Notes under the pieces: generated by a model | The model's input: the letters and a program-made list of their open reading frames with translations, nothing else | Databases searched by the model: none | What the model was told of the DNA's origin: nothing | Source: Octopus sinensis | Taxonomy: Eukaryota | NCBI RefSeq assembly: GCF_006345805.1 | Contig: NC_043001.1 | Span: forward strand, 47,988,001 to 48,052,000 | Direction: 5' to 3' | Length of the DNA: 64,000 bases | In this document: one piece after another, positions 22,580 through 63,142 of the stretch | How positions within the stretch are numbered: position 1 is the first letter of the stretch | Layout of the letters: the number at the start of each line of letters is the position of its first letter | Made by a program: the position numbers and the translations under genes

Positions 22580-22910
22580 AAAGGGTAAAAGCTAAAGATC
22601 CCCTTAGGTCATGAATGACCAAGGGATTGCACATAGAAAGTTCCCTTCCGAGGCACAAGTCCGGGCGAGGTTGTTTTTGGAAGACCAGCAGTCGCCCATG
22701 CATACCAGCCTCCCTTCTCCCCCACTGGTGTTGTCCAAGGGAAAGGCAAAGGCCGATACAGCTTGGCACCAGTGACGTTTCAACTGGAGCAACGTGAAAT
22801 AAAAATGTCTTGCTCAATAACACAACACATAATCTGGTCCGAGAATTGAACTCACTACTTCATGACTTTGAGCTCGACACGTTCACCGCTGAACCATGCG
22901 CCTTTACACA
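22580..22910 (-). mobile_element. tRNA-derived SINE, family D
   Basis: Minus-strand head aaggcgcatggttcagcggtgaacgtg...gtgagttcaattctcgg (A/B-box-like), body ttgagcaagacattt, and a 3' end next to (TA)n. Confidence 0.7.
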
Positions 22911-23229
22911 CGCACACACGCACGCACACACACACATACGCGCACACACAAAAACACTAACACACACACACATTTCAGGGTGTCCAAGAATTCTCGGAGA
23001 TGAGAAGAAGTTACCCTCAAAGCTGAAACCTGGTTTGAATGCTAGCGAAAAAGGCATCCAAAGACCGAGTGGTGGTGTTAGAACGAATGAGGAATTTAGT
23101 CTACCATCCAAGAACTCATTATGCAAAACGTCAGAACAAATACCACAATGTATCTCTAGCAATTCCGCCTATCCCATATCGCCTGCCCGCCATTCGTCTG
23201 CTGGAAAAGAGAACAACAACTTCAGTGTT

Positions 23230-26200
23230 ATATTTTATTTGCAACAAATATTTCTTCTGCCTATTGAGGAATACATAACACCGATTCAGGCAAATATTTC
23301 GTTGTCACAATGGACAAAATAGCAAATGCGTTACCCGGCATAATGGCGAAAAATATACGTTGGTAGAGAATTTCCACCTCACGTATTTCACTACTTTAGT
23401 TGGCTATTTCTGTACCCATAAATCTGAGTAAGGAAGTGATTCGGGGACTCAAAACGCCGGAGCTTTCCCCTGCTCTACGTTCGAAAAGTTATCGATCTGA
23501 GAGTAGCAGGTACTTTTTTAACTTGCGATCTTCTGCTGTATTTTTTTTAACTTGCGATCCTCTGTGTTTTTTTTTAACTTGCGATCCTGTGTGTTTTTTT
23601 TTAACTTGCGATCCTCTGTGTTTTTTTTTAACTTGCGATCCTCTGTGTTTTTTTTTTAACTTGCGATCCTCTGTGTTTTTTTTAACTTGCGATCCTCTGT
23701 GTTTTTTTTTAACTTGCGATCCTCTGTGTTTTTTTTTAACTTGCGATCCTCTGTTTTTTTTTTAACTTGCGATCCTCTGTTTTTTTTTTAACTTGCTATC
23801 TTCTGTTTTTTTTTTTAACTTGCGATCCTCTGGGGTTTTTTTAACTTGCGATCTTCTGTTTTTTTTTTAACTTGCGATCTTCTGTGGTTTTTTTTAACTT
23901 GCGATCCTCTGTGTTTTTTTTTTAACTTGCGATCCTCTGTGTTTTTTTTTAACTTGCGATCCTCTGTGTTTTTTTTTAACTTGCGATCCTCTGTGTTTTT
24001 TTTAACTTGCGATCCTCTGTGTTTTTTTTTTAACTTGCGATCCTCTGTGTTTTTTTTTAACTTGCTATCTTCTGTGTTTTTTTTTAACTTGCGATCCTCT
24101 CTGTTTTTTTTTTAACTTGCGATCCTCTGTGTTTTTTTTTTAACTTGCGATCCTCTGTGTTTTTTTTTAACTTGCGATCCTCTGTGTTTTTTTTTAACTT
24201 GCTATCTTCTTGTTTTTTTTTTTTAACTTGCGATCCTCTGGGGTTTTTTTAACTTGCGATCTTCTGTTTTTTTTTTTAACTTGCGATCTTCTGTGGTTTT
24301 TTTTTAACTTGCGATCCTCTGTGTTTTTTTTTTAACTTGCGATCCTCTGTGTTTTTTTTTAACTTGCGATCCTCTGTGTTTTTTTTAACTTGCGATCCTC
24401 TGTGTTTTTTTAACTTGCGATCTCTGTTGTTTTTTTTTTAACTTGCGATCCTCTGTGTTTTTTTTTAACTTGCTATCTTCTGTGTTTTTTTTTAACTTGC
24501 GATCCTCTCTGTTTTTTTTTTACTTGCGATCCTCTGTGTTTTTTTTTTAACTTGTGATCCTCTGTGTTTTTTTTTAACTTGCTATCTTCTGTGTTTTTTT
24601 TTTAACTTGCGATCCTCTGTGTTTTTTTAACTTGCGATCCTCCGTGTTTTTTTTTCACTTGCGATCCTCTGTGTTTTTTTTTAACTTGCTATCTCTGTGT
24701 TTTTTTTAACTTGCGATCCTCTGTGTTTTTTTTAACTTGCGATCCTCTGTGTTTTTTTTCACTTGCGATCCTCTGTGTTTTTTTTAACTTGCTATCTTCT
24801 GTGTTTTTTTTAACTTGCGATCCTCTGTGTTTTTTTTTAACTTGCGATCCTCTGTGTTTTTTTATTAACTTGCGATCCTCTGTGTTTTTTTTAACTTGCG
24901 ATCCTCTGTGTTTTTTTTTTACTTGCGATCCTCTGTGTTTTTTTTTTAACTTGCGATCCTCTGTGTTTTTTTTTAACTTGCTATCTTCTGTGTTTTTTTT
25001 AACTTGCGATCCTCTGTGTTTTTTTTAACTTGCGATCCTCTGTGTTTTTTTTAACTTGCGATCCTCTGTGTTTTTTTTTACTTGCGATCCTCTGTGTTTT
25101 TTTTTTAACTTGCGATCCTCTGTGTTTTTTTTAACTTGCTATCTTCTGTGTTTTTTTTTAACTTGCGATCCTCTGTGTTTTTTTTTAACTTGCGATCCTC
25201 TGTGTTTTTTTTTAACTTGCGATCCTCTGTGTTTTTTTTTAACTTGCGATCCTCTGTGTTTTTTTTAACTTGCGATCCTCTGTGTTTTTTTTTAACTTGC
25301 GATCTTCTGTGTTTTTTTTAACTTGCGATCCTCTGTGTTTTTTTTTAACTTGCGATCCTCTGTGTTTTTTTTTAACTTGCTATCTTCTGTGTTTTTTTTA
25401 ACTTGCGATCCTCTGGGGTTTTTTAACTTGCGATCTTCTGTTTTTTTTTAACTTGCGATTCTGTGGTTTTTTTTAACTTGCGATCCTCTGTGTTTTTTTT
25501 TTTACTTGCGATCCTCTGTGTTTTTTTTAACTTGCGATCTCTGTGTTTTTTTAACTTGCGATCCTCTGTGTTTTTTTTAACTTGCGATCCTCTGTGTTTT
25601 TTTTTAACTTGCGATCCTCTGTGTTTTTTTTTAACTTGCTATCTTCTGTGTTTTTTTTAACTTGCGATCCTCTCTGTTTTTTTTTAACTTGCGATCCTCT
25701 GTGTTTTTTTTTAACTTGTGATCCTCTGTGTTTTTTTTAACTTGCTATTCTGTTTTTTTTTGTTTAACTTGCGATCCTCTGTGTTTTTTTAACTTGCGAT
25801 CCTCCGTGTTTTTTTTTCACTTGCGATCCTCTGTGTTTTTTTTTAACTTGCTATCTTCTGTGTTTTTTTTAACTTGCGATCCTCTGTGTTTTTTTTAACT
25901 TGCGATCCTCTGTGTTTTTTTTTCACTTGCGATCCTCTGTGTTTTTTTAACTTGCTATCTTCTGTGTTTTTTTTTTAACTTGCGATCCTCTGTGTTTTTT
26001 TAACTTGCGATCCTCTGTGTTTTTTTATTAACTTGCGATCCTCTGTGTTTTTTTTAACTTGCGATCCTCTGTGTTTTTTTTAACTTGCGATCCTCTGTGT
26101 TTTTTTTTAACTTGCGATCCTCTGTGTTTTTTTTTTAACTTGCTATCTTCTGTGTTTTTTTTTAACTTGCGATCCTCTGTGTTTTTTTTAACTTGCGATC

Positions 26201-27790
26201 CTCTGTTTTTTTTTAACTTGCGATCCTCTGTGTTTTTTTTTAACTTGCGATCCTCTGTGTTTTTTTTTAACTTGCGATCCTCTGTGTTTTTTTTTAACTT
26301 GCTATCTTCTGTGTTTTTTTTTAACTTGCGATCCTCTGTGTTTTTTTTTAACTTGCGATCCTCTGTGTTTTTTTTTAACTTGCGATCCTCTGTGTTTTTT
26401 TTTAACTTGCGATCCTCTGTGTTTTTTTTAAACTTGCGATCCTCTGTGTTTTTTTTTAACTTGCTATCTTCTGTGTTTTTTTTTAACTTGCGATCCTCTC
26501 TGTTTTTTTTTAACTTGCGATCCTCTGTGTTTTTTTTTAACTTGCGATCCTCTGTGTTTTTTTTTAACTTGCTATCTTCTGTGTTTTTTTTTAACTGCGA
26601 TCCTCTGTGTTTTTTTAACTTGCTATCTTCTGTGTTTTTTTTTAACTTGCGATCCTCTGTGTTTTTTTTAACTTGCGATCCTCTGTGTTTTTTTATTAAC
26701 TTGCGATCCTCTGTGTTTTTTTTAACTTGCGATCCTCTGTGTTTTTTTTTAACTTGCGATCCTCTGTGTTTTTTTTTAACTTGCTATCTTCTGTGTTTTT
26801 TTTTAACTTGCGATCCTCTGTGTTTTTTTAACTTGCGATCCTCTGTGTTTTTTTATTAACTTGCGATCCTCTGTGTTTTTTTTTAACTTGCGATCCTCTG
26901 TGTTTTTTTTAACTTGCGATCCTCTGTGTTTTTTTTTAACTTGCGATCCTCTGTGTTTTTTTTAACTTGCTATCTTCTGTGTTTTTTTTTAACTTGCGAT
27001 CCTCTGGGGTTTTTTAACTTGCGATCTTCTGTGTTTTTTTAACTTGCGATCCTCTGTGTTTTTTTTTTAACTTGCGATCTTCTGCTGTATTTTTTTTAAC
27101 TTGCGATCCTCTGTGTTTTTTTTAACTTGCGATCCTGTGTTTTTTTTAACTTGCGATCCTGTGTGTGTTTTTTTTAACTTGCGATCCTCTGTGTTTTTTT
27201 TTAACTTGCGATCCTCTGTGTTTTTTTTAACTTGCGATCCTCTGTGTTTTTTTTTAACTTGCGATCCTCTGTGTTTTTTTTTAACTTGCTATCTTCTGTG
27301 TTTTTTTTTAACTTGCGATCCTCTGGGGTTTTTTAACTTGCGATCTTCTGTTTTTTTTTAACTTGCGATCCTCTGTGTTTTTTTTTAACTTGCGATCCTC
27401 TGTGATTTTTTTTTAACTTGCGATCCTCTGTGTTTTTTTTTAACTTGCGATCCTCTGTGTTTTTTTATTAACTTGCGATCCTCTGTGTTTTTTTTTTAAC
27501 TTGCGATCCTCTGTGATTTTTTTAACTTGCGATCCTCGGTGTTTTTTTTTTAACTTGCGATCTTCTGTTTTTTTTTTAACTTGCGATCCTCTGTTGTTTT
27601 TTTTAACTTGCGATCTTCTGAGTCAGGTGCTGATCTCATGAGATTGCCGCTGGACAAAGTATCAGTGCAGACCGCATCCCAGATAAGGGACTTGCCATCG
27701 ATCTTCGGCCGTTCCTTGGTCTAACTCCGCTCTCTCCAGTTGCGACGGAAAACTAACTGCGTCCAAACGGCGTTTAATGTTAGGCAAACC
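23230..27790 (-). mobile_element. CRE-clade non-LTR retrotransposon 3' fragment (REL endonuclease) split by a minisatellite
   Basis: 27790-27621 reads NIKRRLDAVSFPSQLE...DG-KSLIWDAVCTDTLSSGNLMRSA. 23536-23260 reads AEDRKLKKYLLLSDR*LFE...ESSGVL...LLRF.G..IA...EIRE..ILYQRIFFAIMPGNAFAIL. This matches the CRE pattern WD.TC.DT...AE..K..KY..L...F.P.A.E..G...QR.S.AI.RGNA. An AATAAA follows on the minus strand near 23235. Confidence 0.85.
23513..27620. repeat. Minisatellite, unit AACTTGCGATCCTCTGTG(T)8-11 (~27 bp), roughly 145-150 copies
   Basis: Direct reading. Recurrent variants include GCTATCTTCT, CTCTGGGG, TCCGTG..CAC and TTTATTAAC. Confidence 0.97.
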
Positions 27791-29172
27791 AAGACAGCAG
27801 AAGCAGCAACAACAACGACGAAGACGATGACACCATCACTACCATCAGCAGTACCATCATCAATATCAGCAAGTGCTATACTCATGACAGACACGTTGTA
27901 GGAATATAAGTACCTCCTCCCCCCAAAGCACCACGTGATCTCTTACCTCATGGTCTTCTTATTCTTCTCACCATTCAACTTCTGTTTCTTCTACTTCTTA
28001 TCCGCCTCTCACATTTCGCCCACCCAAACAAATTCTCTTTCTGATTCTATCCTTTCATTTCAAATTACTTTTAAATTATCACAACCACTACCACAACAAC
28101 AACAATAACGGCAGCAGCAGCAGCCGTTCAAGAATCCGAACCTGGAGATCTCCATTTCCAGCGACTTCGAAGGCCACTACCCAGTGGTGTCCGGCGTCAA
28201 CGAAGAGCCTTGGACAACAACAAGACGACCAAAGTTTTTTTTTTCCAAGGTCTGGTGTCTCCCGCCCCTAAGCCCTAGACCATCATCTAATCACCGTTAC
28301 CCGTCTTGTTGCTTAGCAACAACAAGAACAGCAGCAACAACAACAGCAACAACAACAGCAGCAGCAACAACATCAACAACAACAACAAGACAGCACCACC
28401 ACTACGATCAGAAGCAGCCACAGTACCATCATAATCCTCTGGTAATGTCATATCTACCATCATTATAACCATTCGCCACCATCACCGTCTACAGTAGCAC
28501 CACCACCACTGCAAAATTATATCAATAACCGCAACAACAACAACAACAATAACAGTTACACAGCCATCGCCACCACCAACAACAACAACTCCACCAACAC
28601 TAAACCGATCATCATTACGAGAGGAAGGCACCTCTTAGTGGTCATTCGGCCTTTAGAGAAATAGCAGCCAAATCTTCTTGCGTCCAAATATATGACCAAA
28701 TGGCCACGGCTGGGATGTCTTTGGTCATAGGTCTGCTTGATCAGGGTTGGCCTACAGCTATACAACAATAACAACGACGACAACAACAACAACAGTAACA
28801 ATAAGTCGATCATGAGTTTCACGAGCAACAGCTGTAGAAATCATCGAAAAATCGCAACTAGCTGCAGCAGCTGTTGCAATGACATCAATAAGTGCAGAAG
28901 TTGCAGTAGCAGCAATCCCAGCAGCAGAAGCTGCACCAGAAGCAGCAACAGCAACAGCAATAGCAATAGCAGCAGCAGCAACAACAACAGCAACAACAAC
29001 AGCAACAACAGGAGGGTTAACAGAAGCAGCAGTAACAACAACAACAACAACAACGATAACTACCATAATAGTAACTATTGACAACCAGTATTGTATGGAG
29101 AGGGGGAGGTTATATATAACTGCTGCACCGTACTCACAACTACATCTACCTACACCACTACCACCACCACCA

Positions 29173-29461
29173 CCTCAACCACCACTTCTACTAGCGACAC
29201 AACCACTTACCGCCACCTTTACTCTCACTACAACCACCACCACCAATACCTCAACCACCACTTCTACTACCGACACAACCACTTACCGCCACCTTTACTC
29301 TCACTACAACCACCACCACCAATACCTCAACCACCACTTCTACTACCGACACAACCACTTACCGCCACCTTTACTCTCACTACAACCACCACCACCAATA
29401 CCTCAACCACCACTTCTACTACCGACACGACCACTTACCGCCACCTTTACTCGCACTACAA
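29173..29461. repeat. 76-bp tandem repeat, ~3.8 copies
   Basis: cctcaaccaccacttctact... starts at 29173, 29249, 29325 and 29401. Confidence 0.93.
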
Positions 29462-32899: not shown

Positions 32900-32911
32900 T
32901 CTATGCTGATG

Positions 32912-32984
32912 TGGAGAGTCCGGGTTTCGATCCTGGATCCACTTACATGCTAAGCAAGCATTCTACAACCTGTGCTAATTCTCT
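32912..32984 (-). pseudogene. tRNA-Ala(AGC) pseudogene
   Basis: Minus strand AGAGAATTAGCACAGGTTGTAGAATGCTTGCTTAGCATGTAAGTGGATCCAGGATCGAAACCCGGACTCTCCA aligns to metazoan tRNA-Ala-AGC. The anticodon arm CTTGC-TTAGCAT-GTAAG is intact; the D and acceptor stems are damaged. Confidence 0.75.
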
Positions 32985-62526: not shown

Positions 62527-62637
62527 TGGGGGTTGGGGTAGAGTGGGGGTTGGGGTAGAGTGGGGGTTGGGGTAGAGTGGGGGTTGGGGTAGAGTGGGGG
62601 TTGGGGTAGAGTGGGGGTTGGGGTAGAGTGGGGGTTG
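62527..62637. repeat. 17-bp G-rich minisatellite (TGGGGGTTGGGGTAGAG) x ~6.5
   Basis: Direct reading. It is followed by a purine-rich GGA tract to about 62820. Confidence 0.95.
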
Positions 62638-63142
62638 TGGGGAGAGTGAGAGGGGGAGCGAAGAGAGGGGAGGGGGAGAGGAGATGAGGGGGAGAGGAGG
62701 GAGGAGGGAGAGGAGGAGAAGTAGGGGAGAAGGAGAAGAAGGAGGAGGAGGAGGAGAAGAAGGAGGGGAGAGGCGGAGAGGAGGGGGTGGTAGCGAGAGG
62801 AGGAGGAGAGGGAGAGAGAGTATGTATGTATGTATGTATACATACATACATACATACATACATGCATACATACATACATACATACATACATACATACATA
62901 CATACATACATACATGCATGCATGCATACAACGCAATAGAGGACAATAAAACATCCGGAGAGATACACGATACTGAGTGAGCCTTTTATTCACAATTGTA
63001 GCGATTTTCGACTGAAACTTAAATTTAGCATGCAGAGCGTTACTACAAACAACATATCTGGACACATCAACAACAACACAATCGAAGAACAGAACGAAAA
63101 CAACAGCTCAACAGGTAAACAAATTCTTCGTAGCTGTAGTTA

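What the first reader, a model, noticed from the sequence alone, without database searches (positions are those of the whole stretch)
23230..27790. 4.1-kb minisatellite born inside a CRE retrotransposon endonuclease motif
Seen: on the minus strand, CRE REL-domain coding sequence runs up to ...NLMRSAPDS-EDRKLK. About 145-150 repeats follow, and then AEDRKLKKYLLL...GNAFAIL resumes. The repeat is a derivative of the nine codons GCA GAA GAT CGC AAG TTA AAA AAG TAC, and a T9 unit (27 bp) would read EDRKLKKNT in frame. Established: AE..K..KY is a conserved REL endonuclease motif. Inference: slippage followed by massive amplification turned a catalytic-domain segment into a satellite, a clear snapshot of satellite birth from a TE ORF. 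If T-run variation is partly sequencing error, much of the array could be an open repeat frame.
Basis: partly seen in the sequence, partly recalled or inferred. Interest (0 to 1): 0.78.

Follow-up and report, generated by a model that had tools for sequence, protein, structure and literature searches.

The report
Minisatellite inside a dead LINE fragment
A 4.1-kb run of about 154 copies of a 27-bp unit grew from the few codons that once encoded the catalytic helix of a retrotransposon's endonuclease, inside a broken, truncated copy of that element; it is a clean example of a process that is already well known.

Summary
Window 23514-27620 is a head-to-tail array on the minus strand: period 27, 153.8 copies, 91% match. 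It occurs nowhere else in the window.

The two flanks, joined through a single copy of the unit, align collinearly to the C-terminal domain of a widespread LINE family with the layout PHD finger, reverse transcriptase, CCHC, restriction-like endonuclease. The best hit has E = 3e-18, and 327 proteins score E <= 1e-3. The unit derives from the nine codons AEDRKLKKY. These sit on the family's A-E-x-x-K-x-x-K-Y positions (88-99% conserved), which correspond to the K..KY catalytic-lysine helix of the R2 endonuclease.

The interpretation needs trimming in four places:
- The host copy is a dead 3' fragment of about 150 codons. It has no RT or CCHC, has lost its PD motif, and carries a frameshift and in-frame stops.
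- "CRE" could not be tested. Only R2-like, RLE-bearing LINE is shown.
- The array is not an open frame, and its A-run variation is partly inherited.
- Whether the repeat has spread beyond this locus could not be tested.

The most likely history is a 28-bp tandem duplication, then slippage and unequal exchange. Ancestral-like units survive at both edges, and multi-unit blocks are duplicated inside. TE-derived tandem arrays are well documented, so interest is low.

The parts
27621..27778 (-). Upstream (5') part of the dead LINE fragment: IKRRLDAVSFPSQLERAELDQG (one frame), then a frameshift near 27715-27722, then TKERPKIDGKSLIWDAVCTDTLSSGNLMRSAPDS. It corresponds to family profile positions about 813-868. 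The PD motif region (7 residues) and 6 further conserved residues are missing.
   Evidence: 27699->27556, profile positions 851-896, iE 8e-6; frame-corrected join: 77-81 bits, profile positions 813/815-959/962.
23514..27620 (-). The 27-bp minisatellite of about 154 copies. The majority unit is CAAGTT-A9-CACAGAGGATCG, which reads EDRKLKKNT when in frame.
27594..27620 (-). First copy at the 5' junction (CAGAAGATCGCAAGTTAAAAAAAACAA). It keeps the ancestral GAA GAT codons but lacks the GCA (Ala) codon.
27075..27103 (-). Internal copy of the most ancestral-like unit type (CAAGTT-A8-TACAGCAGAAGATCG). It is identical to the second-to-last unit, and it preserves the original duplication junction ...TAC|A|GCAGAAG.
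23526..23554 (-). Second-to-last unit, of the same ancestral-like type (TAC-A-GCAGAAGATCG).
23510..23536 (-). Native last copy, GCA GAA GAT CGC AAG TTA AAA AAG TAC = AEDRKLKKY. It runs on into the 3' flank and matches the family's A-E-x-x-K-x-x-K-Y positions.
23261..23509 (-). Downstream part of the LINE fragment: LLLSDR*LFERRAGESSGVLSPRITSLLRFMGTEIAN*SSEIREVEILYQRIFFAIMPGNAFAILSIV... There are in-frame stops at 23491-23489 and 23398-23396, and the frame ends at TAG 23263-23261. Profile homology reaches 23294.
   Evidence: (23581->23294, profile positions 869-964, iE 5.9e-16).

Best explanation
This is non-coding, selfish-DNA debris, not a working system.

A 5'-truncated, dead copy of an R2-like non-LTR retrotransposon lies on the minus strand. 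The family layout is PHD, RT, CCHC, restriction-like endonuclease, and only about the last 150 codons are present here.

Within it, a segment of about 28 bp was duplicated in tandem. That segment is A-GCAGAAGATCGCAAGTTAAAAAAGTAC, which encodes AEDRKLKKY, the K..KY catalytic-lysine helix of the endonuclease. Once two copies existed, replication slippage and unequal exchange or gene conversion expanded them to about 154 copies (4.1 kb). A derived variant was homogenised in the process: GTAC became ACAC, a CAG/GCA triplet was lost, GAA became GAG, and the A6 run grew to about A9.

Later exchanges duplicated multi-unit blocks. In the centre they produced an incipient period of about 6 units (about 161 bp).

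Shown: the array; its position between collinear LINE flanks; its descent from the motif codons; the decay of the host copy; ancestral-like units at the edges; block duplications.

Inferred: the order of events and the molecular mechanism (slippage versus unequal exchange).
For: Array.

Flanks: the two flanks joined through one copy hit 327 proteins at E <= 1e-3 among 1.84 billion representatives. The best hit has E = 3.3e-18 and 51% identity, as a single collinear stretch.

Motif: in a 130-sequence alignment the nine residues fall on columns with A 96%, E 90%, K 99%, K/R 88% and Y 98%.

Family:
- Full-length relatives carry PHD, RVT_1 and a C-terminal CCHC-RH-(K/R)PD-WD-AE..K..KY domain.
- The C-terminal profile hits R2Bm residues 933-996 (CCHC to KPD) at E = 0.002.
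- Foldseek's best matches are R2 proteins over nearly the full length (1e-23), well ahead of L1 ORF2p (1.7e-14).
- K..KY holds the catalytic lysine in R2Bm (PMC4838377).

Host copy: dead and truncated.

Array history:
- Ancestral GAAGATCG states occur at the first, third and last copies.
- The TAC-A-GCAGAAG junction unit is second-to-last.
- Block duplications include the CEB triplet five times and a 17-unit pattern repeated 44 units apart.
- Unit-type and A-run autocorrelation both peak at lags 6 and 15, and A-run autocorrelation also at lag 44.

Setting: 13.5% of the rest of the window is also tandem repeat, so this genome is prone to slippage.
Against: - No other copy of this element, and no orthologous or empty site, was available. 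In-situ origin, as opposed to arrival of an element already carrying the array, is therefore inferred and not shown.
- The 5' junction is not pristine. The first copy lacks the GCA codon, and 6 conserved residues are missing four codons upstream.
- Only 1 nt of microhomology can be read at the proposed duplication boundary.
- The ancestral-like junction unit also occurs internally at unit 20, which needs an extra exchange event to explain.
- Array length and A-run lengths may contain assembly or homopolymer error, which I could not measure.
Confidence: 0.8

Rival explanations
1. The array is not local. The tandem expansion happened in a source element, or became a dispersed satellite family, and this locus is just one of many copies, carried by retrotransposition in trans or by satellite spread.
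For: TE-borne tandem repeats that disperse and seed satellites are well documented (PMC7004042, PMC4079207, PMC7320549). Nothing here excludes other loci, because the source genome could not be searched.
Against: The window has a single array and no second copy of the element. The array destroys the endonuclease helix, and the host fragment has no RT. The edges keep ancestral-like units, as expected for growth in place.
Confidence: 0.1
2. The array is largely an assembly or sequencing artefact: its length is inflated or collapsed, and the variation in A-run length is homopolymer error.
For: A-runs of 6-12 are the classic error class. Unit length varies from 24 to 29 bp, and TRF reports 4% indels.
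Against: Variation is structured, not random. A-run length depends on unit type: the CCCC type has A6-7, the AAT type always A7, and the majority type A7-10. It autocorrelates at lags 6, 15 and 44 (p = 0.0035, 0.012, 0.02). Lags 6 and 15 are also local peaks in unit-type recurrence, and a 17-unit type pattern repeats 44 units apart. Base-substitution variants form reproducible multi-unit motifs.
Confidence: 0.06
3. The array is, or recently was, an open reading frame for a lysine-rich nonapeptide repeat (EDRKLKKNT)n.
For: Two of the three minus-strand frames of the consensus unit have no stop. One stretch of 251 codons (26783->26031) is open and reads mostly EDRKLKKNT.
Against: There are 60-75 stops per frame across the region. 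38 of 153 units would be off-length even with all A-runs equalised, and 31 of those are out of frame. The flanking ORF is truncated, frameshifted and stop-ridden, with no upstream start. The search with the 266-aa plus-strand array ORF found no protein relative.
Confidence: 0.02
4. The units were laid down by repeated abortive target-primed reverse transcription or template jumping. Each unit ends in an A-run that would be a relic of a poly(A) tail.
For: Every unit ends in A6-A12. RLE LINE reverse transcriptases are known to jump templates (established knowledge, not tested here).
Against: The unit is internal to the ORF, about 250 bp upstream of the stop, not the element's 3' end. The A-run is already present as AAAAAAG in the native coding copy (AAG TTA AAA AAG). 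Collinear element sequence flanks the array on both sides.
Confidence: 0.02

Closest known systems
Tandem repeats and satellite DNAs derived from internal segments of transposable elements. Examples: the Chenopodium satellite from the tnp2 conserved domain of CACTA transposons (PMC7320549), retrotransposon-derived tandem repeats that seed satellites in Lathyrus (PMC7004042), Tetris in Drosophila virilis (PMC4079207), and centromeric-retrotransposon-derived repeats in maize (PMC3648361).
   Same: A short internal TE segment is duplicated head to tail and amplified into an array. The array sits inside a recognisable TE remnant, and it evolves by homogenisation and multi-unit duplication.
   Different: Here the source is a 28-bp piece of the endonuclease catalytic helix of an RLE-type LINE, and the unit is minisatellite-sized (27 bp). 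Only one 4.1-kb locus is known, and no genome-wide amplification has been shown.
R2-group non-LTR retrotransposons bearing a restriction-like endonuclease (clades CRE, NeSL, R2, R4, HERO); structures of R2Bm and vertebrate R2 (8gh6, 8ibw, 9nl2, 9nl3, 9dou).
   Same: The family of the host element has RT followed by CCHC, RH, (K/R)PD, D and K..KY. Its C-terminal profile hits the R2Bm CCHC-to-KPD region, and its predicted fold matches R2 proteins over nearly the full length.
   Different: The N-terminus is a PHD finger, not the ZF/Myb of R2. Some members add UCH/USP, ankyrin or OTU domains. The clade (CRE or another) is not established, and the window copy holds only the last 150 or so codons.
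Classical minisatellites (VNTRs) such as the VNTR region of the primate SVA element (from my own knowledge, not tested here).
   Same: A unit of 10-100 bp, a kilobase-scale array, internal variant units, ancestral-like units at the array edges, and growth by slippage or unequal exchange.
   Different: Polymorphism, meiotic instability and any effect on neighbouring genes are unknown for this locus.

Membership tests
RLE-bearing (R2-group) non-LTR retrotransposon: the family of the host element | Reverse transcriptase domain upstream of the endonuclease in a single ORF | tested here: met
   RVT_1 is present in all 8 full-length relatives scanned and in nearly all of the 115 profile hits. The RT region scores best against R2 proteins (2e-21), ahead of L1 ORF2p (4e-10).
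RLE-bearing (R2-group) non-LTR retrotransposon: the family of the host element | CCHC motif followed by a PD-(D/E)XK-type nuclease with RH, (K/R)PD, D and K..KY motifs | tested here: met
   These columns are invariant or nearly so: C805, C807, H817, C821; R830, H831; P864, D865; W880, D881; K911, Y915. The profile hits R2Bm 933-996 at E = 0.002. The motifs are as described for R2Bm (PMC4838377).
RLE-bearing (R2-group) non-LTR retrotransposon: the family of the host element | [quoted passage not shown] | tested here: met
   The AF2 model has pLDDT 91 and pTM 0.86. Its elements run H827-844, E849-851, E866-873, E876-885, two helices (893-898, 902-914), E923-930. The Foldseek top 7 hits are all R2 proteins (1e-23 to 6e-19), with about 875-1050 aligned columns.
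RLE-bearing non-LTR retrotransposon: the copy in this window | An intact element (RT, CCHC, catalytic PD..D..K, open frame) | tested here: not met
   Only profile positions about 813-962 are present. There is no RT or CCHC in any frame of the 64 kb. The PD region is deleted, and there is a frameshift and in-frame stops. It is a remnant, not a functional member.
CRE clade (CRE1/2, SLACS, CZAR and relatives) | Placement within CRE in an RT phylogeny with reference elements | not testable with these tools
   No reference CRE, NeSL, HERO or R4 sequences were available. Database names are all uncharacterized or hypothetical. The clade definition comes from the literature (PMC4640811; PMC3636483).
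CRE clade (CRE1/2, SLACS, CZAR and relatives) | Site-specific insertion (spliced-leader genes in the founding members) with target-site duplication | not tested
   The fragment's ends cannot be defined without other copies. No spliced-leader or other RNA gene was found in the window by Rfam.
Minisatellite (VNTR) | Head-to-tail array of a 10-100 bp unit spanning hundreds to thousands of bp | tested here: met
   Period 27, 153.8 copies, 4,107 bp.
Satellite DNA | High genomic abundance, meaning long arrays and/or many loci | not testable with these tools
   The source genome is not in any searchable collection. The 21-mer is absent from metagenome and prokaryote genome contigs and from the paper library. 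There is a single locus in the window.

The most novel reading that the evidence does not exclude
This locus is the progenitor, or an early member, of a species-wide satellite family whose monomer descends from the catalytic-lysine helix of an RLE endonuclease. Its incipient periodicity of about 6 units (about 161 bp) would be the first step toward a nucleosome-sized higher-order repeat. That would be a true 'birth of a satellite' caught with the ancestral junction still readable.
Probability: 0.07. Interest if true: 0.5.

Novelty: new member of a known kind. Interest (0 to 1): 0.25.

Why it matters
The locus is a tidy teaching example. Both array junctions, the native coding copy and a near-ancestral duplication-junction unit are still readable. 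The source of the monomer can therefore be pinned to nine specific codons of a structurally defined catalytic helix.

It adds no new principle, because TE-derived tandem arrays, including arrays from TE protein-coding domains, are established. It has practical value for repeat annotation: the array should be masked as TE-derived minisatellite, and its long plus-strand ORFs (up to 266 aa) are not genes.

A side product is a description of a widespread, unnamed R2-like LINE family (PHD, RT, CCHC/RLE, with variable UCH, ankyrin or OTU additions) and a confident structural model for it.

Tried and rejected
- Pfam on the reconstructed fragment: no family.
- Word-indexed protein search with the fragment: no hit. 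The full HMMER scan was needed.
- Protein search with the 266-aa plus-strand array ORF, meant to find the repeat on other contigs: 8000 low-complexity candidates, none significant.
- tblastn and blastn of the fragment and flanks against the window: no second copy.
- Exact 21-mer scans of metagenome contigs and genome contigs: 0 hits.
- The 15-mer (both orientations) searched in the paper library: 0 hits.
- Exact-protein look-ups of two window ORFs, meant to identify the source genome: not on record.
- Look-up of relative P0003: an anonymous ENA contig.
- Cluster names and profile-search names, meant to settle the clade: only 'uncharacterized' or 'hypothetical'.
- Literature searches for a PHD- or UCH-bearing CRE or Ambal architecture: nothing decisive.
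- Rfam and tRNA scans for an RNA-gene target site: only one tRNA-Ala, 5 kb away.

Considered and rejected: a coding repeat, a TPRT-derived array, and chance resemblance of the unit to the motif. On the last point, the unit supplies all five conserved residues at the right place between collinear flanks.
Full report
**Observation.** Reading the minus strand of 22800-28300 shows an uninterrupted run of near-identical units of about 27 bp. TRF reports 23514-27620, period 27, 153.8 copies, 91% matches, 4% indels and score 6708. That is by far the strongest of 138 tandem-repeat rows in the window.

Splitting at the CAAGT core gives 154 copies, counting one unit with a mutated core and the native last copy. 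Unit lengths are 24-29 bp, with 27 bp in 68 units, 26 in 38, 28 in 25 and 25 in 15. A-runs are 6-12 long, with a mode of 9.

The 18-mer GGATCGCAAGTTAAAAAA with up to 2 mismatches occurs 153 times. All hits are on the minus strand within 23514-27616, against 0.01 expected, and none lies elsewhere in the window. In-frame 27-bp units read EDRKLKKNT.

**What the flanks are.** Neither Pfam nor the word-indexed protein search recognised the fragment. A full HMMER scan of 1.84 billion representatives was then run with the two flanks joined through one copy of the unit. It found 327 proteins at E <= 1e-3 and 19 at E <= 1e-10. The best hit had E = 3.3e-18 and 51% identity, and almost every hit was a single collinear stretch covering query residues about 5-110.

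Full-length hits are 900-1400 aa proteins with an N-terminal PHD finger, RVT_1 and a conserved C-terminal region. Some also carry a C-terminal ubiquitin hydrolase (UCH) domain. The C-terminal region reads C..C..H..C, RH, (K/R)PDG, WD.TC, AE..K..KY, ET.G, QR.S.A.QRGNA.

A profile of this C-terminal region hits R2Bm protein residues 933-996, the CCHC-RH-KPD stretch, at E = 0.002. The RT region scores best against R2 proteins (2e-21) and much lower against L1 ORF2p (4e-10).

An AlphaFold2 model of relative P0039 with a 56-sequence alignment is confident (pLDDT 91, pTM 0.86). [quoted passage not shown] Foldseek's seven best PDB matches are all R2 retrotransposon proteins (1e-23 to 6e-19), aligned over nearly the whole length, ahead of L1 ORF2p (1.7e-14). 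The family is therefore an R2-like LINE bearing a restriction-like endonuclease (RLE).

**The motif.** In a 130-sequence alignment of the domain, the window's AEDRKLKKY falls on columns where A is 96%, E 90%, K 99%, K/R 88% and Y 98% conserved. One relative, P0063, even reads AEDRKRRKY.

In the model of P0039, the motif (residues 907-915) lies almost wholly in helix 902-914, the second core helix of the nuclease fold. For R2Bm, Govindaraju et al. showed by mutagenesis that the K..KY motif in alpha-helix 2 carries the catalytic lysine (PMC4838377).

**State of the host copy.** A profile of 13 full-length relatives was searched against all six frames of the window. It gave only two real hits, both on the minus strand. 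One is 27699->27556 (profile positions 851-896, iE 8e-6) and the other is 23581->23294 (positions 869-964, iE 5.9e-16). There is no RT and no CCHC anywhere in the 64 kb.

With one frameshift corrected, homology extends up to IKRRLDAVSFPSQLERAELDQG at about 27778. The whole remnant then aligns to profile positions 813/815-959/962 at 77-81 bits. The fragment:
- lacks 7 residues at the PD motif;
- lacks 6 conserved residues four codons before the array;
- has in-frame stops at 23491-23489 and 23398-23396;
- ends at TAG 23263-23261.

It abuts GTT/GCT-rich low-complexity sequence at about 27800. This is a 5'-truncated, decayed 3' remnant, the usual fate of LINE insertions, and not a functional ORF.

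**Origin and growth of the array.** The last copy (23536->23510) is the native coding sequence and runs on into the 3' flank. The unit before it reads ...AAAAAAAATAC-A-GCAGAAGATCG. That is the end of one coding copy (GTAC mutated to ATAC) joined through one A to the start of the next. This fits an original tandem duplication of the 28-bp segment A-GCAGAAGATCGCAAGTTAAAAAAGTAC.

The majority unit (83 of 154) differs from that ancestor in four ways:
- T to C (giving ACAC);
- loss of a CAG/GCA triplet;
- GAA to GAG;
- a longer A-run.

The ancestral GAAGATCG state survives in 12 units, including the first, third and last. This is the pattern expected when exchange homogenises the interior of an array and leaves the edges old.

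The order of variant units shows multi-unit duplications:
- the triplet C-E-B occurs five times;
- a 17-unit pattern recurs 44 units apart;
- a D-A-B/B motif recurs every 6-7 units in the centre.

Exact repeats reach 144 bp. Outside the array, 13.5% of the window is also tandem repeat, so the genomic setting favours slippage. The steps from duplication to expansion are inferred. The data do not separate replication slippage from unequal sister-chromatid exchange or gene conversion.

**Open frame and sequencing error.** Each minus-strand frame has 60-75 stops across 23200-27800, and the longest open stretch is 251 codons. If every A-run were forced to 9, 115 of 153 units would be 27 bp. The other 38 would still be off-length, and 31 of those are out of frame.

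A-run length is not random:
- the CCCC-type units have A6-7;
- the AAT-type units always have A7;
- the majority type has A7-10.

A-run length also autocorrelates at lags 6, 15 and 44 units (p = 0.0035, 0.012 and 0.02 by permutation). Lags 6 and 15 are also local peaks in unit-type recurrence, and the 17-unit pattern repeats 44 units apart. Several lags were tested, so these p-values are only indicative. Together with the type dependence, they show that at least part of the variation is inherited. The long plus-strand ORFs in the array (up to 266 aa) are artefacts of a stop-free repeat.

**What could not be settled.**
- The clade label 'CRE' needs an RT phylogeny with reference elements. RLE clades are defined that way (PMC4640811; PMC3636483). 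No names or references were retrievable, and literature searches gave no matching PHD/UCH architecture.
- Whether the repeat exists at other loci could not be tested. The source genome is in none of the searchable collections.

**Comparison and novelty.** Tandem arrays and satellites that arise from internal TE segments are well documented. Examples are:
- retrotransposon-derived tandem repeats seeding satellites (PMC7004042);
- a major satellite derived from the conserved tnp2 domain of CACTA transposons (PMC7320549);
- Tetris (PMC4079207);
- centromeric-retrotransposon-derived repeats (PMC3648361).

This locus is a new, unusually legible member of that kind. It is a minisatellite whose monomer maps to nine codons of a catalytic helix, with the founding junction still visible. 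It is not a new kind of element, and there is no evidence of function.

**Verdict.** Novelty is 'new member of a known kind', and interest is 0.25.

Noticed in passing
whole window 1-64000: The window is extremely rich in tandem repeats. 19% of it (13.5% without the array) is TRF-detected repeat, mostly (ATAG)n, (ACAT)n, (TA)n, (AC)n and (ATT)n. GC is 28-46%. No ORF of 130 aa or more looks like a real gene, so this is a repeat-rich, probably intergenic or intronic stretch of an SSR-rich eukaryotic genome.
   Followed up: partly
window 29160-29461: A 76-bp unit is repeated 4.0 times at 97% identity (ACCACCACCAATACCTCAACC...). It lies inside Thr/Pro-rich low-complexity plus-strand ORFs of 203 and 266 aa.
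   Followed up: no
window 62527-62811: A G-rich 17-bp repeat, TGGGGGTTGGGGTAGAG, occurs 7.1 times at 98% identity. It is followed by GGA/GAG-rich low complexity and may form G-quadruplexes.
   Followed up: no
window 32911-32984 (minus): ARAGORN calls a tRNA-Ala(AGC), but no Rfam family reaches its gathering score anywhere in the window. It may be a tRNA gene or the head of a tRNA-derived SINE.
   Followed up: no
window 22840-22972 (minus): About 290 bp beyond the LINE fragment's stop codon lies a (TG)n/(AC)n tract (22906-22972). It is followed directly by a stretch that looks like a tRNA-derived SINE (GGCGCATGGTTCAGCGGT...GTTCAATTCTCGGACC). Some RLE LINE lineages target (TG)n microsatellites (PMC4640811), but in this SSR-rich sequence the adjacency may be chance.
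   Followed up: no
relatives P0019, P0033, P0050, P0174, P0203, P0206, P0271, P0260 (not in the window): The R2-like LINE family related to the host fragment carries varied accessory domains: an N-terminal PHD, a C-terminal UCH/USP ubiquitin hydrolase, ankyrin repeats, OTU (PF02338), PF01693 and an RFX DNA-binding domain. Named members come from a butterfly, a tardigrade, poppy and the alga Closterium, and most others come from unnamed metagenome or Logan contigs. The family seems to have no curated name in the sources searched.
   Followed up: partly
window 26059-26859 (+) and other plus-strand ORFs in 23400-27361: Because the plus strand of the repeat lacks stops in some frames, ORFs of 70-266 aa (FFLTCDPLCFF...) appear inside the array. 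Gene callers could mis-annotate them.
   Followed up: yes
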